Program-made: the position numbers and the translations under genes
From: Oculina patagonica
Taxonomy: Eukaryota
Assembly: GCF_052425735.1 (NCBI RefSeq)
Contig: NC_135761.1
Location: forward strand, 12,152,001-12,216,000
Direction: 5' to 3'
DNA: 64,000 nt
Notes under the pieces: generated by a model
What the model was told of the DNA's origin: nothing
Databases searched by the model: none
Seen by the model: only the letters and a program-made list of their open reading frames with translations
Shown: positions 12,101 through 35,800 of the stretch, one piece after another
How positions within the stretch are numbered: the stretch's first letter is position 1
How the letters are laid out: each line of letters starts with the position of its first letter

Positions 12101-12883
12101 AACATGGTATAATACAGAGTACTACCTCATTGTTATGTTGCAAACATTTTTAAAAACTGTGAGTATTAAAGTAAGGTAGAGCAAAAACTGCAAAAATATC
12201 TAACTTCAAAGATGACCTTATATTTTGCTTCATGAATCAGCAGAAATTTTTGTCGGCCACATTCAAGTGCAAATGGAATTTTCGCCATTGACTTTACACA
12301 CTTTAAGTGGAAATGAAACGCAGTAAAATTTGCATACATGCTCAAAACATGATTACAAAAATTGACCCAAATCTTGCGTTTATTATCAGGAAAACAATGC
12401 ATCCAACTTACCTATGAAGCCCTTTTGAGCAGCCACCATTAGCGGCGTCAATCCAAACTTGTCCATCACCTCAACGACCGTGTTATTTTCTTGCAGAATT
12501 TTCCGAACTTTCTCCAAATCTTGCCTGGATACAGCCTTGTGAAGTTCTGCCCCAGACGGCGGTTCGTTTGCTGTACAGACAGTGATCGGGTCGCTCCAGC
12601 CGCCTCCCTGTCGATCGGTGTCGCTTTCCATCACCCGCAGCCGGCATAAGTACTGAGTCATAGGCTCCAACCCTTTGAACACGTATTGTTGACTGTAGCC
12701 TTGATAGTTTGTTAGTGGATCGAGCGTCGGGCCGCCGGGACATGGGCTGCGCGCACGAGCTCTGTTCAACTGCACGTGAAACAGTTTTCGCTTCTTGTTG
12801 TTGTTATCGTTTTCCGAATCTTCCCATTTCAGTTCGATGCTGTTATAGTTTACTTCGCCCACCGTTAGCTCGGGCACAGACAT
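9104..12883 (-). CDS. FANK1: Fibronectin type III and ankyrin repeat domain protein 1, ~364 aa, 2 exons
   Basis: Exon 1 12883-12412 ([40 protein letters not shown]3 domain, then first ankyrin repeat; ATAG|gtaagt); exon 2 9726-9104 (tag|AT, phase-compatible; [27 protein letters not shown] repeats); 1095 nt in frame. Confidence 0.9.
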
Positions 12884-15106
12884 CTTGTTGTACTTGTAAA
12901 CTCTGCGACGATTCTGCCGATCTCTAACGCCCTGTGATTGCACCAGTGATTAAGGTAGCTATTGAATCAAATAACTGTTAACTTGACAACGTTGACACGT
13001 AGAAATTTGTGTCTAAGCCACTGAAATAAATGCTAATAGGCAAACCTTTCCGTCACGCGTGCGATCAAAACTTGTAAGCTCCTTTCGGTTCCCGGTTCAC
13101 TGATCATAAATTAACACGGGGTAAAAATGTTAAATTTATGTTGACATAAAAAATCGTCATCTAGACATGGGGTATTGGTTGTCCGATCCGTTATTAAGTA
13201 AAACAAGTTCCCTAAACTTTTCAGTCTTCAGCAAACTTCTGCTCCGTATTAAACGCCCTGAGGGATTTAGAGCTCAATTACAAATTCAAGATCCCGTCCT
13301 GAGAATAAACTCGATGCACGAAACAAACGAATGCAAATAAATGTACGAATAATTTATTTGAATTAAATAACATCCCGTTGATTCGCCAAGACCCAAGGTT
13401 AAAATATACTCAAAATATACCTAACTTGTTAATTATTAACTTGTTTCGGACAGAAATGACGCTAGAGCACTGTTCTTCAAGCTTATTATCGTGATGAAGA
13501 CAGTAAGGGGCTTCATAAAACGCTTTTATTGTTATGGCTGTAACCAACGAACCATAGTTATCATAAACGGAAACACGAAATCGTTTTTTTTGCGTCATAA
13601 ATATTTGGTATGTGTAGGGTTCTAGAAGCCGAAGAAGTTTCTATGCATGTACGACTTTATTCAATTTCTCGTTATAAAGGTCCATTAATGCTGCCTAGCA
13701 TGTTCGTATGGATTTTTTCTTTCCAGCTTAGCACGGAGACTTACAAAGAGGATGTAATTGCAGTAATAGCAGTCCACATTCACATCCAGAGTCAATTGAA
13801 GTAGGCAAATATTAAATCTTTTAAGTCTATGGATTTATGGATGAGTTCCCGGTGAGACCATTCAAATGAAAGCTATTGAGCTTGACTTTCATGTGGTGCT
13901 GTTTGTTCCTTGATATTATGCGAAAAGAAATTGAAGAATATTTTATCATTGTGAACTTAAACACTCTTGGAAGTGAATTAAAGGATTTTAACTTTCGTAC
14001 CGTGCGAGGGCAGACAGATTTCCTTCTCTTGTTTGTTGAGCCAAAAATCCGTCTGCTTTTCGTGGCTATAAGGTCATTTCTTTTAAAAAATAAATAAATA
14101 ACAGCTTCTCTTTTCCTTAGCGTATGGATCACTTCATTCCCACCATTCTAAAGAAAAAATAGCTGAAAAAATAAGCTCAGAAGGCAAGCAGCACTTTTAC
14201 CCAGCAATCAGCGCGGCGAGCTCGTTCCATTGTCTTTTCTGTCTTTAAAATCCAACATGGCGGCTACCCCGAACTGGTACCCTCTGGAGAATGTACGTCA
14301 AAACGCCACCACTGAAGACAAAACGCCTCTGGCGGGATTTTTACGTGAAATAAGCTTTCTTGTATACTTAAACCTTCGGCGCGGCACGTCTTAAGGACGA
14401 GGAATATACAGTCAGTTCATATGTTTTCCTTTGGGGAAGCTGTTTTCTTACGTGAATCAATTATTTTGTCCATACTGTGGAAAGTGCGTTTAATCGTTTC
14501 CGGGGAGCATTTTGAGCGGTTCAGGGGATGACGATTGTGCGAGCCCTCAAGTTTGGTCATGTGCTTTGAGTGCGCATGTAAAAAGTAGAGTGGGCCGAGA
14601 CCCATTCTTGTCAATTCAAAACAGATGAACTACCTCAGGTTAAAAGACGACTGAATGACTAGCTCTGTAAAAGACGGATTTTCGCACCTGGCGGTAATCC
14701 GTCTGCTTTAGCAAATGATGAAATGATGCTTTAGCAAATGATGAAGAAACTGTTTTCATTAAGAGGACTTAATGTATTAAAACGTCTTAAGCGCATAGCG
14801 GATGGTCTGTCTGAATGATCGGTTTATTATTATTATTAATCTAGAAACGAGATTAACTATGATTATCCTATGATCATGATTTACTGCTACTGAAATTTTG
14901 GCGGCTAAATTGTTCAATGTTAGCTTAGCGTAATTTTAACTGTTCAAATTATGGAAGTGGTCTGAGTATCGAGTACCTTGAAATCTTCTCTATATAATAA
15001 GCGTCTATACAGAAAACAGTTAAATTCAATCGCGAAGTTACGCGTCGTCTTCGCTAGCACGTTTTCAAACCGTATATAAAGTGTTCCGTCTACACGACTA
15101 TCTTCC

Positions 15107-15757: not shown

Positions 15758-16665
15758 TCTCGACAGTCTATGTGTTCTTTTTACTCAGTCGTCTATGAAT
15801 GCGGCATGTGCATGCAGCATCTAGTCATTCAAGGCATGGGTGGACTAAACTTGATAGTGTTACGTCACCGTTTCGGTCAACTTCGCCTTTTCCGCTCACA
15901 CGGTGTTGGCAAATCTCTGACATTTTTCAAGAATCTCATCTGATTTTGGTCCCTTCCCTGCCGCTTTTGAGTCATTTCACTGTAACTAAAATCCCTGTAA
16001 GACGGAAACTTGGAGCCGGTCCCTACGGTGTCCGTAGTATGTAGGTAGAGTTAACCGTAGTATGTATTTTTAGTTAAAATGGCCATCTGACAAACAGTAT
16101 TTTTATCAGTATGCATCCAGGCACAGATGAAAAAAATGACCATATGGAAAAAAGCCTTGTGCACTTTCTTGTGAATTAATGCTGTAACCACAATTTGGCC
16201 AACTGTGGTGCAGGTTGATGAGTATAGCATGCTGGTTCAGCGGATTGGCAGGTGGAAAGCTCATCCCTAGCCTCCGTTTAAGAGTGCGCGATCGCGAGAA
16301 GGCCGCGCGAGGAAAATTCCACTACTCGTCCTTTTTTCTTGTAGCCGACGAAAGCCTCATTTCTTTGTCAGTCAAGTCACAAACCGCAAAGTTATACTGG
16401 ATAAAACTCAAAATTGAGAGAAACAATCAATCACTTTCCCACAAAACCAGCGGACAACCACAACAGATATGGTATTCAGTTCAGAGTGAGGACTGGGCTT
16501 CACGTACCAAAATGTGTCATTACCAATGCGACTGCTAATTAAAATTCTACAATGTAAAGAATTAAATGACTGCTTATCAGCAACGAAAAGCAGTTTAATA
16601 AGTGCTGTATAATTTTTTAGGTATTTAGTTTTCTTTTCCAAAAAACTTACAAATTCCTCCAAACG

Positions 16666-17220
16666 TCATTCTTTTCCCTTAAAACGAGCCGGTAACTGCG
16701 CCATTTTCTCCACCAGTAATGCGATCATATCTTCGTCGCGTTTCTCTATCGCGATATGAAAAGGAATATACTTCTCGATCGTTTCAGCGTATAAGTCAGC
16801 TCCGTTGCAAATCAACAGGCGAGCGAGTTCCACATGACCGCCAAGAACAGCCGCGTGAAGAGCAGTCCAATCTTCGCTATCCACAGTGTTAATTTTCGCG
16901 CCACAATCTAACAGTGCCTTTACACATTCCAGCCTCCCTTCGAACGCTGCTTCGTGAATCAGTGGAACGCCACTTTTGCTCATTTCGTTGACCTTAATTC
17001 CTTCCTCTTTGACAATTCGAGGGATCTCGTCGGGTTTGTTGTTCATTACCGCCTCCCGGAGGTTACTACTGTAGCTCCTACGGCGCTCCGATTTGTACTT
17101 CAATTTAAAACTATTCACGCACAATTTATCCGCAGTTTTCTTGACATCTCCGTTGCCAGAATTTCCTTCATCCTCCCATAAATCGATTTTTATTTTGGGT
17201 GTTTGCCGCTTTGTCGCCAT
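16666..17220 (-). CDS. Small ankyrin-repeat protein, PPP1R27-like, no canonical RVxF (184 aa)
   Basis: Single ORF with SGVPLIHEAAFEGRLECVKALL and DWTALHAAVLGGH repeats resembling PPP1R27/MYPT ankyrins; paralogous to 20500-21156. Confidence 0.8.
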   Translation of the reverse strand: MATKRQTPKIKIDLWEDEGNSGNGDVKKTADKLCVNSFKLKYKSERRRSYSSNLREAVMNNKPDEIPRIVKEEGIKVNEMSKSGVPLIHEAAFEGRLECVKALLDCGAKINTVDSEDWTALHAAVLGGHVELARLLICNGADLYAETIEKYIPFHIAIEKRDEDMIALLVEKMAQLPARFKGKE

Positions 17221-18202
17221 TTGAACTATCGCAGGTTCACACTTTTGCTGTAATTAAATGAAACTGAAGGCGAATCTGGCTTGTTCAAATGCCATTAAAG
17301 ACGTACTTTCTTGCAAAGATCGCGCGTGGGGTCAGTCTTCGTGCGCTCGCGGAGAAGAAAACACCATTTGTTTACCATCAAATTGCACTCCCTTTGCTTC
17401 TTGTCTCGGACGGAGTTAGCTCACCAAGTTTTAATAACAACTGCACTTTTGACGTGCGTCAGACAATGACAAGTTCTCATGGGAGAGATTAGCGGGTTGT
17501 TGGGAAGAACGCTAATTTTATGCGACTTAAAAGGCAAACAAAGTGACTGCTCTTTGAAATGCGAACAAACGTCCAAAACTAGCGATTATATTTGGCCACA
17601 AGTCACGAAAAGCTCAATTCCGACTTCTTTCGTGCTTAATAACTAGAAATCAATATGGCGTGCAGGATATTTTAGAAACCTAATGAAATAACGGGCAAAA
17701 ACTAAGTCAGCTAATACTTCTTTTGTTTCGGCGTCGCGGCGTTAATTATGTCGACATGAAAGAAAAATCTGCAAATTACAGCCTTTTAGTCATTTAAACA
17801 AACAAAACCCTTCTAACGACGAATTTGCGAAAATGAAAATATCGCTTCCGGATACAGACTGCCTGGGAAATTTGACAAGGTAATTATCATAATTATCCCG
17901 ATCAAAGGTGGATAAAAATATTGTTTTATAAACCTATAATTTATCTTACCCACAGCGCAAACCTAATCCTAAATCCTTAATTAAATAAAAAGGCAAGTTA
18001 GAATGAGTCACAACTGAATTGTTTTGTACAGTTCTTTTGAAAGATGTGTTACATCTTTATGGTTTCCTGTGCTATGTAGAATGCGTAGGATGTAATTTAC
18101 TGGAAAAGAAAAGAACGGGAACAAAGATAAAGTTCCCGCCTTATTTTACATCAAAGACTCCGGTAGTGTTGTCATCAATAAAAATATTTAACATTGCTTC
18201 TA

Positions 18203-18381
18203 CTCTCTCTTCCGCGGAGGCCTCTTATTTTTTCGTACGGGCTGGGAAATGGGGAGATGTGAAAATTAAGCGTGCGGAGCCTGGAGAGAATTGAAACGAA
18301 AGCGCGCGGGGGTCTCTGGGAAGGGAAAAGGCATGCGTTTTTCGCCTTCCTCCACTGAAGGAGCTTCTGCGGAGGAGAGAG
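18203..18381. mobile_element. MITE with 9-bp TSD
   Basis: CTCTCTCTTCCGCGGAGGC...GCTTCTGCGGAGGAGAGAG flanked by ttgcttcta / ttgcgtcta. Confidence 0.75.
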
Positions 18382-18671
18382 TTGCGTCTATAACTTCCAA
18401 TGAGAGCTACGTTGTTTTCATGCCCTCGCCAGCCGTTTTTTTGCCCCGTACAAGCATCGAGCTTTAGTAATTTCAGAACAAGGAGTCAACTACAAACCGG
18501 CTTCATCATTAAATCATGCTCGGAGAAAACGTGATTAATCATCTACGAAAGATTTGAAAACATTTTCACTCTACTTTACAAGTATGTCAAGCCAGTGCAA
18601 AGCATAACATGCCAGCCGTATATACGCATGGTTTCGTTTAGTTGCGGCTGTTAACATTGTTGCAATTGTTC

Positions 18672-18910
18672 TAGACTACTGGTAGTCTGTCTTTTCTTTT
18701 AGGGTCTAAGTAGCGCGCGCATATACTAATCTGTAGAGACGCGAGCCGCAAACTTACGGATGAACGAGAAAGGGATTTTCCTCGATCGCGCGGGGTGAGA
18801 GCGCGCGCTCTCTTGTCCTTCCCCAATCTCTCCTCGCGCGTACTGAACCTTCTCCTAAGCCTTATACTGCCTTACAAATTTCGAGAGAAAAACAGACTGC
18901 AAGCAGTCTA
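18672..18910. mobile_element. MITE with perfect 9-bp TSD
   Basis: TAGACTAC...GCAGTCTA flanked by caattgttc on both sides. Confidence 0.85.
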
Positions 18911-18921
18911 CAATTGTTCTC

Positions 18922-19512
18922 TCTGACATGTAGCAGTGACAAGATTATGTGTTGTTCACAGAGATGGGACGTAGAGCGGGGACATGTAGCAGCAACAAAA
19001 ATCTCAATGTGTACTGGGGTGGGGGAGGGTAGAGGTATTTTCTGAAGGAGCATGTCGCAGCGACGTCCTCTCGTGTGTGCTGATTATTTTTTGGCAAGCA
19101 TAATACGAACTTTGAAGCCGTTTTGTCCCTGCGACATGTTGCACGGAATTCAACTCGTTCAAGTTCGTGCAACATGTCGCAAGGACAAAATGTTGCACGT
19201 GCCAAAAATTATCATAACACACGCGAGGGGATGTGTCGCTGCTACATGTCCCTGGGGCATGTCCCCACTACAGTTACTTGTGTGTGTACACATCTTGATT
19301 TTGTTGCTGCTACATGTCCCCGCGACACGTCCCTGCTGCATGTCCCTTCTCGACCCTTCAGTGTGAACAATACATGATTTTGTCGTTGCTACATGTCGCT
19401 GCGCCGGCCTCAAGAGTCCTCATGGGCCCGATGAGGATAAGTAAGTAAGTAAGTAAGTACATGTCGCTGCGACGTGTTCCTGCGTCTTGTCCCCACGTGT
19501 GCGGGGACCTTT
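18922..19512. mobile_element. MITE-like element of internal inverted acatgt/gcgac repeats
   Basis: ggggacatgtagcagcaacaaaa vs ttttgttgctgctacatgtcccc; many acatgtcgc units. Confidence 0.7.
19404..19457 (+). mobile_element. Extremely 5'-truncated non-LTR retrotransposon tail (RTE-like) ending (TAAG)5
   Basis: Flanked by exact 14-bp duplication tacatgtcgctgcg at 19390-19403 and 19458-19471. Confidence 0.75.
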
Positions 19513-19861
19513 AAAGCAAAAGTATTACTTTTTCTTACCTGCTTGACACGAATCGAGTTGAATTAGCAATAAAGTTTACGCTACTTAAATCACCGGAAAT
19601 CCGGTCGTCAAGTGCCACCATACTATACTGGTTTTAAAATAATCTTTTAAAAACAATTACGTGACAAAATATGAAAACCGCGAGAGTTTGACACGCATAT
19701 CACTCCCAATTCAAATTAATGACAACCACATCCCGTCTGGTATTGTAGCTAAGAAGCGTACAGTAACAAAAAACCCAATTTTGAAAGCTTTTTGTTTCAC
19801 TTCGTGCTTAGGAAAAAAGGGCATACATACTTGCTGGGACTTGTTTCTTTTCGCAATGTCT

Positions 19862-20016
19862 CGTGACGTCACGCTAGTGGGATCACGTCACGAGACGAAG
19901 CCAACACGCACACGCAATTTCACAGGCCGAAAAAGAAAAATACGTCACATATCGTTGAGGTCAAGTCTTCGATTATTCTCTTTATTATTTTTGAAAAAAC
20001 GAGTCGGAACACGTCA
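19862..20016 (+). promoter_or_regulatory. CRE cluster upstream of the RVxF ankyrin gene
   Basis: TGACGTCA at 19864-19871 within palindrome CGTGACGTCACG; CGTCA half-sites at 19886, 19943, 20012. Confidence 0.6.
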
Positions 20017-20499
20017 TTTATCAGTTTTTCCAAGTAGTCAAAAACAAAGCATCCTATGAATGGAGGAGTTAACAGTTTATTTTTGGAGGTAATGTTATTG
20101 TTGATTATGAAAACATTAATGTTGTTTTTAGTCCCTATCTTAGATTAGTTAAGCGGTTCTACAAACAATCGGCGTGACCCCTTAGACTGAAAAACAGCAC
20201 TGTAGCATATATTACCCAAGATTAAGACGCATTGTACACGCTCCCGTGATTTCTCGTTATTTTACAGCGGGTTGCCAGCGGAATATTTTACGGTGTGATT
20301 ACAAAGCTCGCACAAGCAAATCATTTCAACATCCCATTTACCGATTTCAACTGGAGTGAAACAACGTCAATACAAAACTCATCGACTTGTTAAAATCACA
20401 TCGTGACTTGAGTTTTATTGATGCGTGGAGGGCATGTTGGAGTAGCAGTAAATCTCTTTGATCAGATAAATGTCCGCTGCTTTCATCTAAAGAACGCAT

Positions 20500-21156
20500 A
20501 TGCTTTTGGCTCACAGTATGATGGCTGAGCGCAACAAAAGACGAGCCCTTCTTTCCGAGACTGATGCAGCTAATTTAGCATCTGGAACTTTCTTGTATCC
20601 GAAAACTGTTTTACCGAGAGCGGCTTCGACACCGGAAATACCACTGGAAATCCGTAGCTCGTCTAAAGATTATTCCGTAGAGGAAAACAACGTATGTAAA
20701 AGGAAATACAGTCGTCCTCGGAGTGTCAGCTTCCACCCAGACATACGGCTATATTACGCCGCCACAACCAACGATTTAGAGGAGGTTAAGATGTTGGTAG
20801 AGTCGGGAATGGCTGACGTGAACGCCACCAACCCGGCCGAGGGCGCTACCGCGTTACACGGTGCCGCCTACGAAGGACACGTTGATTGTCTTCGGTATCT
20901 TCTTGAAAACGGCGCAGACGTGAACATTCATGACGATGATGGCTGGACGTCGCTACACGCCGCCGTGATTGGGAAGAAAAGGAAATGTGTTGAACTTTTA
21001 TTGAAAGCAAACTGTGACCCTTTTGCCGAGACCATCGATGGCTTGACGCCATTTCAAATGGCCATAGAAATAGGGAATGATAAAATTCTAAGACAGTTCG
21101 TAAAGAGGTTTAGTTCGATGATGGATGACGACTCTGTCCCAGAGACATCAGTATGA
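20500..21156 (+). CDS. Ankyrin-repeat PP1 regulatory subunit, PPP1R27-like (218 aa)
   Basis: RSVSFHPD (RVxF) directly before ankyrin repeats (GATALHGAAYEGHVDCLRYLL, GWTSLHAAV); ends ETSV. Confidence 0.85.
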   Translation: MLLAHSMMAERNKRRALLSETDAANLASGTFLYPKTVLPRAASTPEIPLEIRSSSKDYSVEENNVCKRKYSRPRSVSFHPDIRLYYAATTNDLEEVKMLVESGMADVNATNPAEGATALHGAAYEGHVDCLRYLLENGADVNIHDDDGWTSLHAAVIGKKRKCVELLLKANCDPFAETIDGLTPFQMAIEIGNDKILRQFVKRFSSMMDDDSVPETSV

Positions 21157-23386
21157 ATTCTGTGAATTCAGGTTGTTAGCAGTGATCGGAAAATTGACAG
21201 ATCTTTTAAGAAAAGTGTGGACATGGACTAGTGTTAATTGAGTTGACGCCGGCCTCTTCTATGCAATACTCAGCCAAACAGGAAAGAGGCGAAGTATAAA
21301 GTGTATATAGATTTTTCTTTACTTCAAATTCAATCTTCAAAAAAAAAAAAAAAAACTGATCTAACCGTACGTTTCACCTTAGCACCCTTCACCGTCGAGG
21401 CTTAAACCTATTGATCACAATTTTAGGGAATAAAGTTGAGCCTCTACAAATCAAAGTTTTGTTAACTATTTTGAATGTTGACTCATTACTATGGCGTATT
21501 GTCTTTCTCAAGAGGAGCACGCTTTGGCATGGCTTCTAACCCATTCAAAATGCTTGATGCGTTACAAATTTGCTATATAATAGTTCAGGGCTGTTAGTCC
21601 AAATATAACGACCCTTGTTATTACTCACCCTGTGGGAGTCATTACCGTTGGAGTGGAACTGAATGATATACGACCCCCCCCCCCCCCCCAATACATCAGA
21701 CATGCTTCATGTCACGCGCGCGCGTTTTCGCGAACTGGAGGATCACGCGAGGACGATTAGCAGCCTCCTCAAGAAATCAAACTTGTCGCCAAATGCAAAT
21801 TAGGTGAAAAGCTACTAAGACTTCTTAAATACATCTCTAGTACCTTTGCAGAGAACTGCATAAAGACGTTGACGCTAGTTTATTCTCCAAAATCGCATGA
21901 CGTGACAAAAAGGGCACATGACAGTCCAATTTATAGGACTATGAGTTTCCGAATGGAGAGGAGAAGTCTGTCTACTTACTGAAAATCCGATTACGCCTTC
22001 AAATTATTGGGGTTATATTTACCACTGACCCCAATTTTCCACGTCACAAGCTTGCACGGGACCGAAATAAACTATACTGTTTCAGTGATAAAGTAATGAT
22101 TTTCTAAGTCAGTTGCTTAAGATCATCTGTTGAAGTGTGCAGAAACACTGAAAACACTCTCAGCATATTTGGTCCATCTTCAGCACTATAATGAACCGAC
22201 GTTATAGAAGATTCCTGCAAATGCAGTTATAATCACTTCACCACACAGGTCTTCATTTAATTCACTTTAATTTGTCTTAAGTAGTGACGCACGAGGTCTT
22301 TGACAACCGTTACAAAATCTTTCTAGTAAAATTAACTTAGCGAAAGAAGTACGTGTTGTCTGTGAAAATACAGGATGCAAATGCAAGATTTTTAGAAAAC
22401 AGCAGAGTTCCGGGTCCTCTTTAGCAAAACAGTTTGTTATAAGTTTGAACAGTGGTCAAAAGTGGTCAGGATGAGTAGTTACAGGTTTGAGGCCTGGGTC
22501 AGAGTTCAGTCGTTGATCCTCTCCTGTAGCTAATTGCTGTATCGTTTGACGCGACAATCTACAATTATGTCTCAAAAGAAGATTATTTTTTACTAATTGT
22601 TAATATTATATTACGGCAAATTCTTAGCCAGACTTAGGACTTGGCAATTTGTTTAATGAAGACAAACTGCTACCCCGGCTGATCAGTGCTGTGTAATGTT
22701 ACGGGAGAAATTTCCCTGTTTCAGTCATTTCTGTGTTTATCCTTATTAAGCATTTAAAATCTTTCAAAAAGCCAACAGTAGTTTTAAAGTAAAAAACAAA
22801 CGCTTGTTAAGTTCAATCTTATATTTTTATTCAACTACTTGTATATTTGTCAGCTGTTCTTAGTTAATTTCTTTGTAAGATATTCGTTTGTACTGAACTG
22901 TGTACTTTTCGCTTAGTCATGTTGAACTTTGTACTTGTACATCTACGGACTTAAGATAATTTCTTTGTTTGATATTCATATTGCATCAGCTTCTTTCGAA
23001 AGGATATGATGCAATACACATCACAGTAAAGATTCCTATGGACAGGACCCACTGTAGTAGAAAGAAAAACAATTAAAGTTTAGAAAGTCTTTACTCTAAG
23101 AATCCTGTCGTGATTCGGGTCTATCGGCATTCCCTCAATTCAAATGTTTAAAAAACGTGTTTAATCACAAATGTGATTAAAATCAATGATTTCAAGTCAT
23201 TAACGGTCTCATATTATTAATCTCATTATTTTTGCGCGTTTTGAGCCAAGAAGGCCAAACTCAGAAATCCTGGCGATTCCATTTTCGTACCCAGAGCCCT
23301 TCGATCCACTTGGCCGGTAGTCCTGGGCACAAGAGGCTCCGATCAAATTTTATAACTTCCGCCGGTCTCTTGCCATGACTGTAACT

Positions 23387-23508
23387 CAACCTCGTCTCCA
23401 GGGTCTTCTCCGTTTTCAAAATGGCGGCTGGTCGGCGGCTCGTCGTCTTCTCAAGACGAGCCACCATTTTGAAAACTCGTCGCCGGAAGGACCCTGGGGA
23501 CGAGGTTG
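23387..23508. mobile_element. 122-bp MITE
   Basis: CAACCTCGT...ACGAGGTTG flanked by gactgtaact / gactgtaacg. Confidence 0.8.
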
Positions 23509-25254
23509 GACTGTAACGGTGGTAATCTAGAATGGGGTGAAGATGACTCAAAAACTTCCAGTTCTCTGTAGATGTTTTTGTAGCCTTTTATATATTTTAA
23601 GAAATTTGAAACTTGCGAAAACATTTAATCGTGAACTTCTGCTACTGCGTGTTTTGTCCTCGATTTGTCTGGCCTGCTAAGCGGTGAAATATGAGCATGA
23701 AGGCATTTAATTATAACTTACAATGGTGCCAAAGTTATAAATTCGTAACAGGTCAAAATTAAAGTCTTCCAAACATTGAAAAATAAACATTTTCCTTGGG
23801 GGTTGGAGTCTAACCGAGGTCTACATTTTGGTCATTTTCCATCAAGATAGCCGGTATGGTGGTATTCATATTATTATGCAAATGCTCTCTGCCAGAAGGC
23901 AAACATTGGAAAGAAGACAATTCTTGGAAAATAGTCACAGTCGAGAGCCAAGTTATGAAATATTGATGGTGTTACCTTGACTTGCTAACGACACGACACA
24001 TCTTTTTATCTTTTTAACAAAGTGTAAAAATTCTAGAAAACTTCGCAGAATATCCTCTATTACAATTCGAAAAGAAAAACTACGAAAACCCTTATTATAA
24101 GCACTAAGAACCCGATTGAAATTCCCGATACTTACTTGCTTGCCTCATCAGAAACCAGTTGCACAATTTGCATTACAATATAAAACAAACTTGGCTATCG
24201 TGAATGGGTCCTGTCGATTCCAAAGATACAGCTTCTAATTCATGCAAGTGCAAAATTGAGGCCCCTTGAATTTGCCTCTTATAGATAGCACGCATCACTG
24301 AAACATCTGCATATATACCTGTCTGATCCGCTTCAAAATCGAAACGGAGATAATACGCAAGCGAAATGCCTCGAGGGACTTAATTTCATGTCGAAATTGC
24401 CCTCGATAAAAAAATAAAAAGTTAACATCAATTTAAAGAAAGAAGAAAATCGGACTTTTTTTTAAATTATTTTCACATACAGCTAAATGTTTAACACTTC
24501 GCAAAGAAGAAATTTGGAATGTAAATTGCGTCTGAGCGAAATACTCCAAGGGACTTTCATGTCGAAGTTCTCCCCAACACAAACTGACTAAAATCCGTTT
24601 AAATGGGTCAAATTTATTTTAAAAATAATTGTCTTTCCATATGCATTAAAGAGTTTACTTGCTGAAGATAAAATCAGGAATGTAAATTAATGTATTTTAT
24701 TTTTACCTTAGGCTAATCCGTAAAATAAGCTACACTTTCAAAATCATTGTTGTATTAAGTGACTTTAAAAAATAAAATATTCTTCAATTCTATGGTAAAA
24801 GTCCATTTTTTCGGAAAAAATTCATTTCACTTAAAGATTTGTCCAGCTGTTTCCTAGAATGTCTAAAATAGCATGTTTTATAGTACAGGTTTACTTAATA
24901 ATACTTTCTTTTGACAAAATATTGCCAATTGATTTCTTTTAAAAAATAAGACATTTGTCTTTGTCATGGAAATTGTAAGTTGAAGCCACCCCTTACAAAT
25001 GTTAATTTGCCGTCTCCTGAAGAAAGTCATGAAATCCTCTTTAAACATCTTTAAAACCCTGTACTAAAAACAGAAAATCCTTGTTAATTCTTCGCAACCT
25101 TCGGTCATCTTTGCTCGGCTTTTGCTTCTTAAAATTAGCACCTTTTAAAACCATCCTTTACAAGAACAATTTATTTTGCATGTGAAATTATCTAAATGTC
25201 CTAAGGTGGGGATTAAGTATTGTTGTGATAAGTAATGGACACAAAGTTAAAAGC

Positions 25255-25338
25255 AGCCAATGAAATCGTTGTTTGCAACATCACCTGCGTAAGAACGGAA
25301 ACGAATTCGCCTCGGTTGTAAAGTGTAGCTATATATGA
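25255..25338 (+). promoter_or_regulatory. CCAAT box plus TATA-like core promoter
   Basis: agccaatg at ~25255 and ctatatatg at ~25329, about 80 bp upstream of the ATG at 25411. Confidence 0.5.
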
Positions 25339-25410
25339 ATCAGGTGCGAGACGCAATTCAAGTTAAACAAACCCACAGGAAGTTCTTCTGAATCTCTTCC
25401 TTCTCAAAGA

Positions 25411-26328
25411 ATGGTGGAAAACGACGAAAAGCCATGGCCCGAGCCAGCTCCAGACTGGCCAGAAGCGAAAGAAGTTTGGAAATGGGGTTGGCCGTTTCAC
25501 GTTTATTTCTTTGCAGTGTTGTATTGCTTTGTCGTCATTCGAGGCCTTTACGTCTTGATCAGGCACGGGAAAGTGCATTCTTGGAGGAAGAACCATCGCT
25601 TCTTACTGAACTTGCTTCTTTTGGCGTTTGGCACAACTCGGGCGCTATTTCTGATTTGGGATCCGTATGGCTCGAACCCAAACCATACCAAAACAGAGCT
25701 CATCATTTGTATCATAACTTTTGGCGTCGGAACAGCGTGCATAACTTCAGCGTTCAGTTTTTTATTGCTAATCGTGCTCGAGAGCACCCGCATCTCGCTT
25801 GCGCCGAGCAAGTTTCAAAACCGAACGTTCCTGCTCGGAGTTTTGACAGTCAACGTGGGTTACGTGGTAATATCCGACTTAATTGTTGCTCATTTTCATG
25901 AAGCTATGGTAATGATCTTAATTTGCCAAATAACGTTCGCTCTCTGGGGATTTCTCATCGCACTGGGTTATGCATTCGCTGCGGTGCGACTATGGCGCAA
26001 CCTGACGGCCTCGCGCCAGACCGCTCAGTACGACCCGGGTCTCGCTGCTGAAGGCAAAAAGATAACACGGCTGGTCAGCTTGCTGTATTCGGCGGCGATC
26101 TGTGGAGTGGTTCTGTTTTCCACAATTGTTTACACGGCTCTTGGCGAGACAGGAGTGTACAATGAGTCAGGTGAAGTGAGTAATTGGCCGTGGTTTGCGG
26201 TGCAGACATTGCTAAGGACGTGTGAGGTGTTCATGTGCTTGGTTATATTTTTGATTGCGCTGAAGACAAGCACTGCCAACTCTACGAACAACAATCGAGT
26301 CGACAGTGTCTCGAAAGTAACGACCTAA
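25411..26328 (+). CDS. PRRT3/PRRT4-like multi-pass (about 7 TM) membrane protein, 305 aa, intronless CDS
   Basis: PEPAPDW..W.W.FHVYFFAVLY, RALFLIWDPYGS and WPWFAVQTLLRTCE motifs; ~7 hydrophobic segments. Confidence 0.8.
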   Translation: MVENDEKPWPEPAPDWPEAKEVWKWGWPFHVYFFAVLYCFVVIRGLYVLIRHGKVHSWRKNHRFLLNLLLLAFGTTRALFLIWDPYGSNPNHTKTELIICIITFGVGTACITSAFSFLLLIVLESTRISLAPSKFQNRTFLLGVLTVNVGYVVISDLIVAHFHEAMVMILICQITFALWGFLIALGYAFAAVRLWRNLTASRQTAQYDPGLAAEGKKITRLVSLLYSAAICGVVLFSTIVYTALGETGVYNESGEVSNWPWFAVQTLLRTCEVFMCLVIFLIALKTSTANSTNNNRVDSVSKVTT

Positions 26329-27756
26329 TGTTGCCCGAGTAAATGAACTGCTTGTTCAGCTTTTCGAGCCCGAAGTCCTCAATGAGCCTTCGAGAAAAAC
26401 TAGACTAATCATGTAAACTGCATTAAAAATCCCAGCAACGTGAGAAGCTTCGAGAAAATTAGACTAATAAACTGCATTAAAAAAAAAGGAAGCTTTCAAT
26501 AAAATTTTCGTCACCATGCAAATGTTTTAAATTAACTCAGGCGGGATAAATAAATAACAATTTTCTTTCTTAAATAGACAATATATTGACAAGCTGCTTT
26601 TTCTTTAAAGATTAATATCGAGATAAAAATGTTAATTTTGTCCCCGTTTAATTTGCTCAAACAACTGGTTTTGTAGTTAAAAACCAGTTTTGAATCTAAC
26701 CTTCGAATTAATTGTTATTTATCTCAGTGAAAGCACACATATCTCACAAATTAAAATCAGTTATTTCAAAGTAGATTTATAATTTCGCGTGTCTTAACCA
26801 CGATGCAGCAACTACAATTAAGGTAGGGTCAATATAATAGAGTTGTTCCGCACAAGAACCTTAGAGATGTAAATTTCCATTTCGTAACCTTAGGGCCTGT
26901 TTATATGGAGGAGAGTTGTCCCTGGTAGGAGGGCTACCCTCTCCCCCGAGCTATCTTTTGCCGAGAACGCCGGTTTAATTTGCATGCCTAAGGTTACAAA
27001 GCAGAAATTTGCATCTGTAAGGTTTTTGTGCGGAACAGCTCCAATGAGTCGTAAAAAATGAAAGTTACAATGCTGACAGAGAACTCCGGTCCCTTTTATC
27101 AAATATTTCATTTCTGAAAATAATTGGCCATCAAATATGTTCGCTTTAGGCACTTGGTGACGTTACATATCCCTTGCGTTGTTTTCTTCTACATTTATTC
27201 CAAGACCGCCATTGGATTATTAATCAACAGCTAAATATAACCCAATTTTTTGAAAAAAAAATTGGATCGACTGGACCGAACCAAAGAGAAGGTCCGCAAA
27301 CCTGCCGAAAGGCATCATCCCATGAAATATCACATCAATACGTAATGAACAAGCAAGTTTGATAAAGTTTCTTACAGCTTTGCTCAGCAAAAATAAACAT
27401 CAATCTCGAGAAAAAGATTCTTCAAGCCACTTTTGATATTGTCAAGTAGGACAAATAAAAAAACGGAAAAATTTTTCCTTTTCGTGTCCAATGTTCAGTA
27501 AGAAACAGATGCGCGCGAAAATAATTTATAAGCCGTCTGGATCCGTGGTCAATTTTGCAAAATTCTGACCGCTCAGCGAACCAATCAAAACGTTTATTTT
27601 CATCGTGGGCCAACTTTTAAAGGAACCAATAGGATTTTAATGTCTGTTACGCTACGCAACGAGCGGGTTTGGCTGGGAATGCAAAGGGGCGAGGCATCAG
27701 CGATCTAGCCCCCGAAGTGAAGGCGGGGACCCGACTGAGAGGTAGGTGCTTGGACG

Positions 27757-27770
27757 GTTGCTATGGAAAC
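27757..27770. promoter_or_regulatory. RFX X-box motif
   Basis: GTTGCTATGGAAAC inside a GC-rich island. Confidence 0.4.
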
Positions 27771-30190
27771 CAACTCCACAGCGAGACCCTTTGCACGAGT
27801 CACACTGGCCAAAGCCAGTGGAGAAAAGGAAAGAAAAAGGGGGTATATAGAGGAGTGTGGGAGACGAAAAACAAACTACTTGCAGCTAGCGAGCAAACTG
27901 CGAATGTACGCGTCAGCATGACGACAGCGCGCGAAAGACGTGGTGCGCGAGGGCGAGGCTGAGCCAAGACGAGCAAGGTTGTCTAGCCCGTCCCAATTTC
28001 TGAGCATGCACAGAATCTGTATTTCCAGCCAATCAGATTTGTCAGAATTGACAATGAGTCCTTGTATCGCGTGACAGATATGACTTTTTGCTGACCTTTT
28101 TAATGGTAAGAAGATCGTTTTTTTCCATACTTCAGCCTGATTTATCCACGGAAATCTTTCGTTTCCATTCTCGTCCCCAGAGCCCTAATTGGTTTTTTTT
28201 TTAGATCATCGTGTCATTGAAACGAGGTGTTCTGGGGACAAGATTAATAAACGAAGTGACAAAAATTATTCGAACTCCTTGGTGATGGCCAGCTGCCATT
28301 TTGAATAAAAAGGACGCAGATTATATGCAAATATTATTGTGCACTTTTTATCGTCAATGGTTGTGTTTCCATCTCAGTTCGTATAAAAGACAACAATCGC
28401 GACAAAAAAGTTTTCGTTTTACTAACAGTTTATCTTCCGTCGTGAATTACAACAGGAAAAACATGAAAAATTACCAAAAACATTTTTTAAGCTGCTATCT
28501 TAATCAACAAAACAAGAATCATTGAAATTATATTGTACGTGTTTATTTCTTTTTTAATGGCTCGGTTGCTATCTTAAATTAAACGAACAGGAATCATGAA
28601 AAAGATTTTTTTCTTGTTAATAGTCCAGCTGCCATCTTGAATGAAAAGAACAAAAATCGTGGAAACGGTCTATAAAATCTTCTAGGCTCAACTAGTAAAA
28701 ATTGAACAGAATTCTTTTTTCGCTAGCTAACATTGTCCTGAAGATCAGAGATTTTAGGAATTGCAGAGACACTTTAATCGTTTTTCTTTTCGCCTGTTTT
28801 AGAGCTTCGAACATTTAAGATCTGTGAAACGTTCGGTTCCTTTCTGGAAAAGCGAATTCCAAGCTTTACGTTTCCTTAAACTGCTTAAAGTTTAAGGAAT
28901 GGACGCGCTAAGCCACCGCCAAAAAAAACGATGTCGATTTTTTAATATTGCCACCAACCGAACAGCAGACAAATGAGATCTTAAAACGATTTAGTTTGTT
29001 TAATACTAAACGCTACTGTTGGTCCTTGTAATGTTGAGTGTGTTTACGATAATATTGAGCTGTCTGAGGGAACACAATACTTCATCTGCGTCAACAACTC
29101 TGAGAGGCAGTGTCGGCCTTTCAAATCACACAGACGGAATCAATTTCTCTCACTTTGTACGATGCTTTATTTGTCTCAGTTGTCAAGCACTGAATAATGA
29201 CGATTTTCAATTAATCATCCGCAAAGGAAAACAATATACCAAACCACAGAGCATGTGAGCAACAAAGAAAAGTGATCGACGCTGCAATATTCTGCCTCTT
29301 GTTTAAGACAGCATCGTTTGAAATTAGGGATTAAGCGAATAATAAGCCAGGGCTGGACCGCGCTGTTTTTGAAAAGAACGTTTAGAAAATTGACTATTTT
29401 AAAACAGCTTACTTAGGAGGAATTTATTACTTGTACTGAATAAAGGAATAGCAGATTAAGTGTCGGATAATTACTACTCTTAAAATTACTATAATTGGAC
29501 GCGGAGCAAGGGTAGTGAGAGCTTTCATTAACGCGATTGATGGGTGTTCGGCCTTTCATATTGAAATTTGTCCTAAAATAATATTTGCCAATGCAAACAA
29601 ATTTACAATTGAGCGGAATTAATATACCAGGCGTTCGCTTTTGAAGTTTTGTGAATTTTAATTACGGTTTTCATGTTGATGACTTCTGCGTCACGAGTAA
29701 TACGGAAAATTTTCTGATTTAACAAGAAATCGATTGCGGGTACAAAGCTGAATTCAGGTGAAAAGTATCTGATGCTTCCAAGAATCGCTTCTGCTGAAAT
29801 CTGCGTCAAGAAAACGAGAAACAGCGCTTGCAACGGGTTCAAAACATCCGGTTTGAAAACATTTTGTTGAAAAAAAAAAACGGGTGCTGTTTTCTTCGCG
29901 ATTAAAGTGTACTTACATACGGCGTAAAGTACACTCGAGCCCGTTAAACAAGTTGTCAAGACTCCGTTCGCTGATATAACCAGGCAAGAAAAACTGGCCT
30001 TTCCAGTTTCTAAGACAACGAAAATAGCATCCGATATGATGCTATAATATGGAAGCCAGTGCAAATCTCGACACACGGAAAACGACATTTCCAAAGTACT
30101 GAAACCCAGCACCGAGGCGACAAACGCAACTGTGAAAACTCGAAACATTCATGTAAAAATCTTACAACTGTGGATTAATTCCTTGGTGAA

Positions 30191-30388
30191 ATGGAAGCGT
30201 CTGCCGCAGAAGAAAGTACAGACAGCGCAAAAGCGTTTAAAAGTTGTGGGAGGACAGGCCGGCGCGGAGCCTGCATTGACACGGATATTACGCGTGATAA
30301 GCTACAAGATATTATTCACAAGGTTGAAAAAGTCTGTTTGGATGAAACAGAAAACTCACAATCGAATCAAGGCGAAAAGGGGACGTAG
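30191..30388 (+). CDS. cAMP-dependent protein kinase inhibitor (PKI family), 65 aa
   Basis: F-K-S-C-G-R-T-G-R-R-G-A aligns with PKI F-x-x-S-G-R-T-G-R-R-N-A; downstream NES-like IIHKVEKVCL; polar tail; gaaATGg start. Confidence 0.85.
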   Translation: MEASAAEESTDSAKAFKSCGRTGRRGACIDTDITRDKLQDIIHKVEKVCLDETENSQSNQGEKGT

Positions 30389-32899: not shown

Positions 32900-35800
32900 T
32901 TATCGAGAAGCTGGATAGCTGCCATCATCATTGTTGAGATTCTCTCTATCTTCAAACTGCTTATCCACCGTCCATGACAGCGCGCTTAGAAAGCCTGGCA
33001 GCGTGATTGTCGGAGCCTGAGGAAAAGAAGCAAGAGAGACCAACATCAAACTTCTCCTCACGATATCAATACTTCATCAAGAGAAAAGGTTATGAGAAGT
33101 AATAAAGTGATCACCAAAAGGAACGTGCTTTGATCTTTTAACAAATTTTCCTAACTCATACTATAAGAAAATGTATGGAGATCAGTCAGGAGAATTTGTA
33201 TGTGGATATTGGGGCTGAACTTACCTGAATATGCCGAGCGTGGGCTAAAAACGGGATCTTTCTGAGGGTCCTGCCGCTCAATCCGTGACTTTTTCTGCAC
33301 AAAACGAGGCAAGCATACCAATATTATTACAAGAATATAAACGATTGAAATTAAGATTGAAATTGACATCAACATTAACAAAGGGACAGAAACTTACCTG
33401 GCTATCTCAAGAAGCTCCAGGCTTAGATTTGTGGCGTCATTATTGACAAAACTGAAATGAAATGGATATAGAAACGGCTTGACCGAAATCTTTCTCGTTT
33501 TGACAACGTATTGCTGTTCGTGGATTAACGAGGAAAAGAAGAATGGTGATTAAAGTTAAAGCGGGTTGGCACCAAACTCAGTAGAGTGCAATACGAAAAG
33601 ACACGTAAACTGTTCAATACAAGGAAAGCGAGTTGTGAGTCGCTGCAAAATTTTCGACATTTTGTTGTCATTTCAGTGGTCTTTATTTTGAGGAAATAAA
33701 ATTTGCTTGAACTGTTCTTTACCGGCAAAATAGAGAGAACATTCAGTGCAAAATCATAGGCACATAAACACAGCGAAGGTCAGAAATTTCTCCCTAAATG
33801 TCCCTGGTGACGTTTTGCAGCTCTCCGATATCCACTGATTAGAAAACTTACTATAATTTCTCACCATTTTTTCTGACCATTTCTCTCGATTAATGGGTTC
33901 GCCAGTTATTGTAAAATGCGTATAAATCGATCAGAGCGCTCGGCATCTTCAGTTATTAGTTCACCAAATATCATACAGCAGTTGGCAGGAAAGTTAAATG
34001 TAAAATACTGGCATTAAGGCTAAAAGACACAATAAATCGTCACTTACCGTAACACTTCCAGGTCTCTGTTAGGGTGATTCCATTCAGAAGAAAGGAAAAA
34101 AGAAAACAGTGTCAATAATTTAAAACATCAATCACTTTGTTAGTTGTAACTTCTCCTTTCAAATTGCAATGAAGATAGTACAGAAATCAAGCAACAAAAG
34201 AAAAGAATACAAGAGATTCTGAAAACCTTATGCCGAGAATCTGCTGTACAGGTGAAATTATTCCAGCCTGCAGGAAATACAATGGAAAAGCATGACATTA
34301 AATCGGTGACATCTCGATTACTGATTAGATTTTTTTTCTAAGAAGCCAGTGGATGTGAAAATTATTACCCTCATAAGCTCAGTTATGCAGGAGTGATAAA
34401 TGGAGAATATCGCATTAACAGATGGAGGTCCAATGTACTGTTTGATGTCTGCCCTGTCAATTAAAAAAGAATTATTTTTATTAATGATTCGATTTACATG
34501 CACAGGGCTGCATATAATTTTTTTCACTTGAAAGGGCATATGTCATACTAAGACACCATCTCGGACATCACCAAAAACAAAAGGTTGAATTTTATTCATT
34601 GTTGGCATAAAATGATTTACGATCAAAAAATTGTCTGGACATCATGTCCGACCACGCTTGGGATTTTGTCGGACATGAGCAAATTTTTAGTTGGCCAGTG
34701 TCCGATGACCGACTGTTGTTTGCAGCCCTGCATGCAGCGCTCGGGGCAGGATGCTAATTTACTTTAGGTAGCTCAAAGAGGGTGCTTATCAGAGAGGGGT
34801 GCTTATTAGGCCTTTAGGGACGGGTTGCTTTATCGGAACAACAATAGATACTGTTACTCAAGAACTGTAACAATAGCGGTTTACATGGTCAAAACCATTT
34901 GCTCATTCAGTATCACTGAATCCACTCAGATGACAACTTTTAAAAGTCATGGCCATCTTCGTTGCTAAAGGACCAACCAACCCTCCAAGTTTATTTTTTT
35001 CCTTAGTGGCCATTTGGCCACCAACTACTCAAGTTTAGTCACCAAATTAAGCTGATGCTTTCAATCTTTTCTCCTAATTTTAGTCGCCAGGCTGGCGACC
35101 TTGGCTCAAATTTAGTCGCCAGCTCCAAAATTTTAGTCGCCATGGCGACTAACATGGTCTAAACTTGGAGGGTTGCCAACACCCATGTTTTATGTTGCTT
35201 TAGGATAAGAAAGCAGACCACATAGTTTACTCCTCTAATCAGTCTATTACTTTTGCAATGAAGGCGCTTATTGGAATAGTGGCGCTTGAAACTTGAGGGT
35301 AATCTCGTTCCCAGATCTCTTCGGCTTTGTCCACAAAGATCTGGGAACAAGATTAACTCGAGGGGAGGGGGGCACTTATTAGAAAGGAGGCACTTATTGG
35401 AAGGATGTCACTTAATCGAATCATTACGATAAGTAATCTATTAGTGGTGACAGCTTATTGGTGCATGGAATGCTTCTTAAATACCACTTGACTAGCTGGT
35501 GCAACCATTAACTGCAAAGCTTCCCATCCTTGTAAGTTTATTAGCTGTAGCATTTTATTTTCCAAGTAACATACCTGTCTACAAATGCTAAGTCTATAGC
35601 TCCAGTAACATTAGAGGTGGTGAGAATAATTACATTGGGAAATCTGAAATATCAATACAGAGAGTTACATATCACATCTGTTGTGAAAGAATAAAGTAAA
35701 TGGAGAAGTGTTGTTACTCCCCCATCCCCTCCCTGATGGGATGCTAGTTCATTAAAGGTTTCCCCCTTGAACTTTGTCACATTGCCCAACAACTCATCAG

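What the first reader, a model, noticed from the sequence alone, without database searches (positions are those of the whole stretch)
16666..30388. Candidate cAMP/PKA/PP1 feedback micro-cluster of small single-exon genes
Seen: four adjacent genes with intronless CDSs in 14 kb: two PPP1R27-like ankyrin proteins, a PRRT3/4-like membrane protein and a PKI-like peptide. A full CRE plus three half-sites precede the RVxF gene, TGACG/CGTCA sits at 17450-17461 before its paralog, and CGTCA occurs at 29089, 29689 and 29804 before PKI. Established: PKI blocks and exports the PKA catalytic subunit, PP1 reverses PKA phosphorylation including on CREB, and CREB binds TGACGTCA. Inference: this may be a co-regulated, cAMP-inducible signal-termination module. 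I know of no such cluster, but cannot exclude chance adjacency.
Basis: partly seen in the sequence, partly recalled or inferred. Interest (0 to 1): 0.75.

Follow-up and report, generated by a model that had tools for sequence, protein, structure and literature searches.

The report
Conserved coral gene neighbourhood, not cAMP module
Four small intronless coral genes (two ankyrin proteins, a GPCR-like membrane protein and a PKA-inhibitor peptide) really sit side by side and stay linked across stony corals, but only the two ankyrin genes carry conserved CRE-type promoter sites, so a four-gene cAMP feedback module is not supported.

Summary

**Gene identities**
- ANK2 (20500-21156) is a PPP1R27/MYPT-like protein. 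Its RPRSVSF (RVxF) motif is invariant in all but one of 35 hexacoral orthologues (RPGSVSF in Porites keeps the RVxF core).
- ANK1 (16666-17220) is a 30%-identical paralogue with no RVxF.
- The 305-aa protein belongs to the PRRT family and has a GPCR-like seven-helix fold. It is one of at least 27 intronless copies in this genome.
- The 65-aa ORF is a single-copy PKI orthologue with an intact pseudosubstrate.

**Linkage**
The order ANK2–PRRT–PKI is kept in four other stony-coral assemblies. ANK1 is confirmed beside it in one of them, and PKI is inverted in another. Three things argue against selection on the cluster:
- TRIP13, an unrelated gene, stays next to PKI too.
- Coral gene order is known to be unusually stable.
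- Two non-scleractinian contigs show no PRRT or PKI within 10 kb of ANK2.

**CRE sites**
CRE-like sites are conserved and lie 30-60 bp upstream of the apparent transcript 5' ends of ANK2 and ANK1 only. PRRT has none. The PKI sites are at background density and unconserved. PKI instead has a 230-bp conserved non-coding element.

**Verdict**
The genes are real and ordinary, and the microsynteny is real. A four-gene cAMP-inducible module is not supported. A CREB/ATF-type promoter on the PP1-regulator gene is plausible but untested. Other first-reader notes on this window cover parts of this stretch.

The parts
16666..17220 (-). ANK1: intronless CDS, 184 aa, three ankyrin repeats, no RVxF. The aligned position reads ERRRS here and varies among orthologues.
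   Evidence: 19 orthologues at 53-97% identity; motif alignment.
16662..17403 (-). Apparent ANK1 transcript: low-depth contigs in putative RNA runs X1 and X7 only.
   Evidence: table 8. The RNA status of the runs is the tool's guess.
17429..17461 (-). ANK1 core promoter: TGACGCACGTCA (17461-17450) followed by a TATA-like TATTAAAA (17436-17429), about 26-58 bp upstream of the 5'-most contig base.
   Evidence: CACGTCAAA is conserved at the same distance (-230 from the ATG) in L009.
19864..20016 (+). ANK2 CRE cluster: full TGACGTCA at 19864 and ACGTCA half-sites at 19886, 19943 and 20012. The first two lie about 55 and 33 bp upstream of the apparent transcript 5' end. The last two lie inside the 5' leader.
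   Evidence: Conservation and turnover across eight species.
19919..21970 (+). Apparent ANK2 transcript, unspliced, with a 5' leader of about 580 nt holding 8 uATGs and a conserved uORF (MLLLIMK..., starting at 20092).
   Evidence: Contigs span 19919-21330 (X7) and 19978-21864 (X1) with no joints. uORF.
20500..21156 (+). ANK2: intronless CDS, 218 aa, with RVxF (RSVSF, residues 74-78, nt 20719-20733) immediately before three ankyrin repeats.
   Evidence: NCBI names the orthologues 'protein phosphatase 1 regulatory subunit 27(-like)'.
25411..26328 (+). PRRT-family GPCR-like seven-helix protein, intronless, 305 aa, without the proline-rich extension.
   Evidence: PF25987 on orthologues. AF2 pLDDT 86.6. 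The 50 best PDB matches listed are all class A GPCRs. At least 27 paralogues in the genome.
29467..29695 (.). Conserved non-coding element 500-720 bp upstream of the PKI ATG, rich in ATAATTA/TAATTA and CCAAT motifs.
   Evidence: 73-75% identity to L004, L009 and L012. Single copy in the genome. No Rfam hit and no convincing fold.
30191..30388 (+). PKI orthologue, 65 aa. Pseudosubstrate segment F16...R21-T-G-R-R-G-A-C28 (nt 30236-30274). NES-like segment L38..I41...V45..V48.L50.
   Evidence: Single copy in the genome.
32903..33323 (-). Last exons of TRIP13, convergent with PKI. This unrelated flanking gene is also kept next to PKI in a distant coral.
   Evidence: Pfam AAA_lid_TRIP13_C. Match to L004 2094-2207.

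Best explanation
This is an ordinary, conserved stretch of a stony-coral chromosome carrying four independently transcribed, intronless genes.

Shown:
- The genes are an ancient divergent pair of small ankyrin proteins, a PRRT-family GPCR-like receptor from a large expanded family, and the genome's single PKI gene.
- Of the ankyrin pair, ANK2 has the RVxF-plus-ankyrin layout of PPP1R27/MYPT-type PP1 regulators. ANK1 has lost or never had the docking motif.
- Gene order is retained across Scleractinia.
- Only the two ankyrin genes have conserved promoter-proximal CRE-like bZIP sites.

Inferred:
- The retained order reflects the slow rearrangement rate of coral genomes, not selection for a cAMP feedback cassette.
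- ANK2 docks PP1 through RSVSF.
- PKI inhibits the PKA catalytic subunit through F-x4-R-x2-RR-G-A-C and may export it through a class-1a NES-like segment.
- ANK1 and ANK2 transcription is driven by a CREB/ATF-family bZIP factor.
- PKI is controlled through its own 230-bp conserved element.
For: Gene identities.

Synteny:
- ERZ25067872: ANK2(+), two PRRT copies, PKI(+).
- ERZ25071792: ANK1(-), ANK2(+), PRRT(+), PKI(+), exactly as in the window, at 53-68% amino-acid identity.
- ERZ26692694: ANK2, PRRT, PKI.
- ERZ25067868: same order with PKI inverted and the last TRIP13 exon still beside it.
- L013: ANK2 and PRRT.

[quoted passage not shown] PRRT-like genes number at least 27 in this genome.

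CRE sites: at ANK2 they are conserved or turned over in place in eight species. The ANK1 site is conserved in L009. PRRT has none. The PKI sites are not conserved.

Transcripts: contigs cover only 16662-17403 and 19919-21970 apart from repeats.
Against: - The ANK2-PRRT-PKI trio is kept in four other assemblies with only small local changes (ANK1 beside it confirmed in one), and I could not measure how this compares with random neighbouring quartets.
- PKI is single copy, so its sitting about 9 kb from an RVxF PP1 regulator is a low-probability coincidence if judged a priori. My rough estimate is about 1% for a PP1 regulator among its four nearest genes.
- PRRT proteins are GPCR-like (PMC13581589), which fits a signalling theme.
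- Co-expression of all four genes was not examined. Reads were laid only on 16401-22400.
Confidence: 0.7

Rival explanations
1. One reading: the four genes form a selected, co-regulated, cAMP-inducible signal-termination cassette. CREB would induce PKI and the PP1 regulator(s), which then shut down PKA signalling.
For: Linkage is conserved in several corals. Conserved CRE-like sites lie at the ANK2 and ANK1 promoters, 30-60 bp from the apparent transcript 5' ends. PKI and the RVxF protein are functionally related to PKA/PP1 by established knowledge.
Against: PKI and PRRT lack conserved CREs. The ANK2 promoter has no TATA near its CREs. TRIP13 is part of the same conserved block. No PRRT or PKI was seen within 10 kb of ANK2 in two non-scleractinian contigs. 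Coral synteny is generally high (PMC6214176). The functional link was assembled post hoc.
Confidence: 0.1
2. The CRE-like sites serve another bZIP programme, not cAMP. Three of the five sites read TGACGTG on the opposite strand, an ATF6/XBP1/CREB3-type core. ANK2 also has a long uATG-rich leader with a conserved uORF. It could therefore be a constitutively or stress-regulated PP1 regulator under translational control, loosely like PPP1R15A/GADD34.
For: TGACGTG/CACGTCA at 17450, 19884 and 20010. An unspliced 5' leader of about 580 nt. The uORF MLLLI(M/F/I)K is conserved in seven genomes. The ANK2 promoter is TATA-less.
Against: The one full palindrome, TGACGTCA, is the canonical CREB site, and its near-copies (GACGTCA, TGACGTCG) are kept in other species. 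The factor assignment rests on motif memory alone. No expression data under stress are available.
Confidence: 0.15
3. Linkage is locked by shared long-range regulation: a genomic regulatory block in which the conserved element upstream of PKI acts on neighbouring genes, so rearrangements are selected against.
For: A 230-bp single-copy non-coding element is as conserved as the coding sequences in four distant corals.
Against: The element stays at a fixed distance from the PKI ATG and moves with PKI when PKI is inverted (L004: element 9290-9501, ATG 10001). It therefore behaves as PKI's own promoter or leader. No other deeply conserved non-coding blocks were found in 14-34 kb.
Confidence: 0.05

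Closest known systems
PKI (cAMP-dependent protein kinase inhibitor, Pfam PF02827; PKIA/B/G in vertebrates)
   Same: Small size (65 aa). Phe, then Arg, then an RR-x-Ala pseudosubstrate, aligned to PKI-alpha residues 5-20 in PDB peptides at weak E (0.7-1.4). A downstream hydrophobic NES-like pattern. The Pfam match spans profile positions 8-56 of 69.
   Different: The window protein scores below the Pfam cut-off (21.8 against 25 bits). Gly replaces Asn before the P-site Ala, and Cys replaces Ile at P+1. Both are invariant in 15 coral sequences. No binding test was possible.
PPP1R27 (DYSFIP1) and the MYPT-type PP1 regulators (PPP1R12/16)
   Same: An RVxF motif directly N-terminal to ankyrin repeats. 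NCBI names the orthologues PPP1R27(-like). The nearest non-cnidarian hits are short PPP1R12A isoforms. MYPT1 (1s70_B) matches from residue 67 onward.
   Different: Only three repeats. I saw no MyPhoNE-like motif in the N-terminus. Orthology to vertebrate PPP1R27 was not tested here. ANK1 lacks RVxF in all 20 sequences.
PRRT3/PRRT4 'superdark' GPCR-like 7TM family (PMC13581589)
   Same: PF25987 on the orthologues. A seven-helix fold whose best PDB matches are class A GPCRs.
   Different: It consists of the 7TM core alone, without a proline-rich disordered region, and belongs to a lineage-expanded intronless family. The paper found arrestin recruitment for the human proteins but no G-protein coupling, so a cAMP link is not implied.
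CREB target promoters with promoter-proximal CREs
   Same: A full or half CRE within about 60 bp of the apparent transcript start, conserved across species. ANK1 has CRE plus a TATA-like box, the layout I recall as associated with cAMP inducibility (from memory, not checked).
   Different: ANK2 has no TATA. Occupancy and inducibility are untested. Many bZIP factors share these sites.
Conserved microsynteny blocks of scleractinian corals (PMC6214176)
   Same: Collinear orthologues kept between distant corals, with small inversions and duplications. The block is lost or loosened outside Scleractinia.
   Different: None shown. Whether this block is retained more than average was not measured.

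Membership tests
PKI (PF02827) | Match to the family profile at the curated cut-off | tested here: inconclusive
   The window protein scores 21.8 bits against a cut-off of 25. 14 of 15 orthologues match, best E=7.3e-7. Two orthologues carry a precomputed PF02827 label.
PKI (PF02827) | Pseudosubstrate RR-x-A-hydrophobic, preceded by Arg at P-6 and Phe at P-11 | tested here: met
   F16, R21, R24, R25, A27 and C28 are invariant in 15 sequences. They align to PKI-alpha peptide chains 4xw5_B and 1cmk_I at weak E. P+1 is Cys, not Ile.
PKI (PF02827) | Inhibits and exports the PKA catalytic subunit | not testable with these tools
   No coral PKA-C sequence could be handed to complex prediction. The NES-like pattern was read by eye only.
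PPP1R27 / MYPT-type PP1 regulators | RVxF docking motif next to ankyrin repeats | tested here: met
   ANK2 has RSVSF at residues 74-78, invariant in 16 aligned orthologues and present in all 35 sequences that cover the region. Ankyrin repeats span residues 84-190. ANK1: not met.
PPP1R27 / MYPT-type PP1 regulators | Orthology to vertebrate PPP1R27 and binding of PP1c | not tested
   This rests only on names given by NCBI to the Montipora, Actinia and Exaiptasia orthologues.
PRRT family (PF25987) | Family profile match and GPCR-like 7TM fold | tested here: met
   PF25987 on orthologues in four genomes. The local Pfam copy gave no hit. AF2 pLDDT 86.6 with seven helices. Foldseek's 50 best listed matches are all class A GPCRs, E 4e-4 to 7e-3.
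PRRT family (PF25987) | Proline-rich extension | tested here: not met
   The 305-aa protein is the 7TM core alone.
cAMP/CREB-regulated gene set | Conserved CRE near the transcription start of every member | tested here: not met
   Met for ANK2 and ANK1. PRRT has none. The PKI half-sites are unconserved.
cAMP/CREB-regulated gene set | Induction by cAMP and CREB occupancy | not testable with these tools
   This needs an experiment.
Functional gene cluster (selected linkage) | Linkage retained beyond the background level and not shared with unrelated neighbours | tested here: inconclusive
   The trio is retained in four other corals. However, TRIP13 is retained too, and PRRT and PKI are absent within 10 kb in two non-scleractinian contigs. 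The background level is high (PMC6214176).

The most novel reading that the evidence does not exclude
ANK2, the PRRT-type GPCR-like receptor and PKI are kept together because they are expressed as one signalling cassette in a particular coral cell type. In it, an orphan 7TM receptor, a PKA inhibitor and a phospho-switchable PP1 regulator together set the gain of PKA/PP1 signalling. The RVxF Ser77 of the PP1 regulator sits in an RxRxxS-F kinase consensus.
Probability: 0.08. Interest if true: 0.65.

Novelty: new member of a known kind. Interest (0 to 1): 0.3.

Why it matters
If the cluster were a selected cAMP feedback cassette, it would be a rare animal example of functionally clustered signalling genes. 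It would also give a first functional hint for the orphan PRRT receptors. As it stands, the value is more modest:
- coral orthologues of PKI and of a PPP1R27/MYPT-like PP1 regulator, with their conserved motifs mapped;
- a conserved CRE-type promoter on the PP1 regulator;
- a deeply conserved non-coding element at PKI.

All three are ready for reporter or perturbation tests.

Tried and rejected
- **A 5' UTR intron in ANK2.** I first read the conserved GAG|GTAATG at 20086-20094 as a splice donor. Contigs run through it unspliced and no joint was reported, so I rejected this. The conserved stretch is the start of a uORF instead.
- **The PKI upstream element as an exon or structured RNA.** There is no Rfam hit. 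The consensus fold is weak, -12 kcal/mol with no net covariation. Both strands and frames give similar pseudo-protein matches.
- **PDB sequence searches.** The single PKI sequence found nothing. The profile search gave only weak hits to the PKI peptides. Searching the ANK2 N-terminal piece returned only generic ankyrins.
- **Context look-ups.** The NCBI-named orthologues P0032 and P0042 returned nothing. P0047's place came without DNA.
- **Bacterial promoter scan.** Irrelevant for this organism.
- **Literature.** Searches on PKI in cnidarians and on PPP1R27 gave nothing useful.
- **Complex prediction.** ANK2-PP1c and PKI-PKA-C were not attempted because no coral PP1c or PKA-C sequence was available in an admissible form.
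Full report
**Observation.**
- ANK1, 16666-17220(-), 184 aa
- ANK2, 20500-21156(+), 218 aa
- a 305-aa membrane protein, 25411-26328(+)
- a 65-aa ORF, 30191-30388(+)

The CRE coordinates are also right. TGACGTCA is at 19864, with CGTCA at 19886, 19943 and 20012. A TGACG/CGTCA pair is at 17450-17461. CGTCA is at 29089, 29689 and 29804.

Half-sites are common in this window: 99 against 80+/-8.6 expected, about 1.55 per kb. The four sites within 160 bp before ANK2 form the only such cluster in the window. Even so, 23 of 300 dinucleotide shuffles reach four. PKI has 4 half-sites in 1.5 kb, which is background, and the membrane-protein gene has none.

**What the genes are.**

*ANK1 and ANK2.* They are 30% identical three-repeat ankyrin proteins.

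ANK2 orthologues occur across Hexacorallia. NCBI names them 'protein phosphatase 1 regulatory subunit 27(-like)' in Montipora, Actinia and Exaiptasia. The next hits outside cnidarians are short PPP1R12A isoforms. The segment KY-x-RPRSVSFHP, which contains an RVxF motif directly before the repeats, is essentially invariant in 35 sequences. The RVxF Ser77 lies in R-x-R-x-x-S-F, and R40/S43 are also invariant. These are candidate phospho-switch sites, by inference only.

ANK1 orthologues (19 sequences, 53-97% identity) never have RVxF. The aligned position is a variable basic-x-Ser patch. Only ANK2 therefore has the defining PP1-docking layout.

*The 305-aa protein.* Its orthologues carry Pfam PF25987 (PRRT3) in four genomes. 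An AlphaFold2 model (pLDDT 86.6, pTM 0.85) has seven helices. Its 50 best listed PDB matches are all class A GPCRs. This agrees with a 2026 paper describing PRRT3/4 as GPCR-like proteins that recruit arrestin but showed no G-protein coupling (PMC13581589). The genome holds at least 27 intronless relatives, several of them in tandem arrays.

*The 65-aa ORF.* It is single copy in the genome. It has 14 orthologues at 60-97% identity, with an invariant C-x-R-x-GRRGAC (nearly invariant G20 and T22 give CGRTGRRGAC) and invariant F16. The window protein is just below the Pfam PKI cut-off, but 14 of 15 family members match, best E=7.3e-7. A profile search aligns residues 15-30 to PKI-alpha peptides from PKA crystal structures at weak E (0.7-1.4).

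**Transcripts.** Contigs from four runs were laid on 16401-22400. The tool guesses these runs are RNA. Apart from repeats, coverage is confined to gene units, which fits RNA.
- Contigs cover 19919-21970 without any joint. ANK2 therefore appears unspliced, with a leader of about 580 nt.
- At low depth, and in two runs only, contigs cover 16662-17403, which is ANK1.
- The full CRE and the next half-site therefore lie about 55 and 33 bp upstream of the ANK2 5' end.
- The ANK1 element TGACGCACGTCA lies about 47-58 bp upstream of its 5' end. A TATA-like TATTAAAA sits between the element and the 5' end.

Contigs cannot fix exact transcript starts.

**Conservation of the sites.**

*ANK2.* Across eight species the promoter keeps CRE-like sites in the same block, with turnover:
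- TGACGTCA in the window
- GACGTCA in four JGI/ENA coral contigs
- TGACGTCG and TGGCGTCG in two distant corals
- the first site lost in one relative, which keeps the neighbouring TCACGTCACGA

*ANK1.* CACGTCAAA is conserved at -230 from the ATG in the most distant coral.

*PKI.* The 29689 site is shared only with the closest relative. Distant species have no half-site at the aligned positions, and one has none within 1.1 kb. Instead a 230-bp element (29467-29695) is 73-75% identical in four distant corals, as conserved as the coding sequences. It is single copy and is not a structured RNA.

*PRRT.* It shows no positional conservation of any site.

**Synteny.**
- ERZ25067872, about 90% amino-acid identity: ANK2, two inverted PRRT copies, then PKI.
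- ERZ25071792, 53-68% identity: ANK1(-), ANK2(+), PRRT(+), PKI(+), exactly as in the window.
- ERZ26692694, which groups near Montipora in the ANK2 tree at weak support (80/57): ANK2, PRRT, PKI.
- ERZ25067868: the same order with PKI alone inverted. The last exon of TRIP13 is still on the far side of PKI, as in the window.
- A JGI contig: ANK2 and PRRT.

Two contigs from non-scleractinian clades of the ANK2 tree show no PRRT or PKI within 10 kb downstream of ANK2. One of them has an ankyrin gene 9 kb upstream in ANK1's orientation.

Published work finds gene order highly conserved among all corals, including across the roughly 415 My complex/robust split. It is not conserved between corals and sea anemones (PMC6214176).

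**Reading.** The linkage is real, but it looks like the coral background. It includes an unrelated gene, tolerates inversion and duplication, and is not seen outside stony corals in the little data I could reach. The regulatory evidence splits the cluster: CRE-type promoters at the two ankyrin genes, a different conserved element at PKI, and nothing recognisable at PRRT.

I therefore take the four-gene cAMP feedback module as unsupported, at about 10%. The narrower idea that ANK2, and also ANK1, is driven by a CREB/ATF-family factor is well founded in sequence, but cAMP dependence is untested. Three of the sites also read TGACGTG, and ANK2's leader carries a uORF conserved in seven genomes. 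A non-cAMP bZIP or translational-control reading therefore remains open.

**Limits.**
- Only one read-laying run was available, so PRRT and PKI transcripts and four-gene co-expression were not examined.
- The species behind the ENA assemblies are unnamed.
- No chromosome-level sea anemone or octocoral locus could be fetched.
- The chance estimate for PKI lying near a PP1 regulator is my own rough figure.
- My recollection that the human homologues are unlinked is from memory and was not checked.

Noticed in passing
window 29467-29695: A 230-bp single-copy non-coding element upstream of PKI. It is 73-75% identical in four distant corals, as conserved as the neighbouring coding sequences. It is rich in ATAATTA/TAATTA, CCAAT and TTTCATATTGAAAT motifs, and it moves with PKI where PKI is inverted.
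   Followed up: partly
window 19919-20499 (uORF from 20092): The ANK2 leader is about 580 nt, unspliced, and holds 8 uATGs. A uORF beginning MLLLI(M/F/I)K at -386 to -445 from the ATG is conserved in seven coral genomes, which hints at translational control.
   Followed up: partly
window 20617-20631 and 20713-20733: ANK2 has an invariant R40/S43 (RAAS-TP). It also has R72-P-R-S-V-S77-F, a basophilic-kinase consensus (RxRxxS-F) overlapping the RVxF motif. Both are possible phospho-switches of PP1 binding.
   Followed up: no
L010 2891-7376 (ERZ26692694, upstream of the ANK2 orthologue): Genes with Pox_A32, Pox_VLTF3 (weak) and YadA_stalk (weak) Pfam hits. This looks like a giant-virus-like insertion in a relative's genome.
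   Followed up: no
own genome, e.g. C4:24.60-24.63 Mb, C13:33.18-33.20 Mb, C8:29.40-29.43 Mb: At least 27 intronless PRRT-like 7TM genes, several in tandem arrays. This is a lineage expansion of an orphan GPCR-like family.
   Followed up: partly
L005 10001-14155 (ERZ25067872): The PRRT gene is duplicated as an inverted pair in this relative, each copy about 90% identical to the window protein.
   Followed up: partly
window 9104-12943(-), 52359-53348(+), 57541-59259(-), 62347-63885(-): Other genes in the window: FN3-plus-ankyrin exons (FANK1-like), an intronless rhodopsin-type GPCR, and two tandem BTB-BACK-Kelch genes.
   Followed up: partly
window 18201-19600: Repeat-rich spacer between ANK1 and ANK2, including a (GTAA)n run at about 19440. 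Putative RNA runs give very high contig depth here with many loose ends, so this coverage is not evidence of a local transcript.
   Followed up: no
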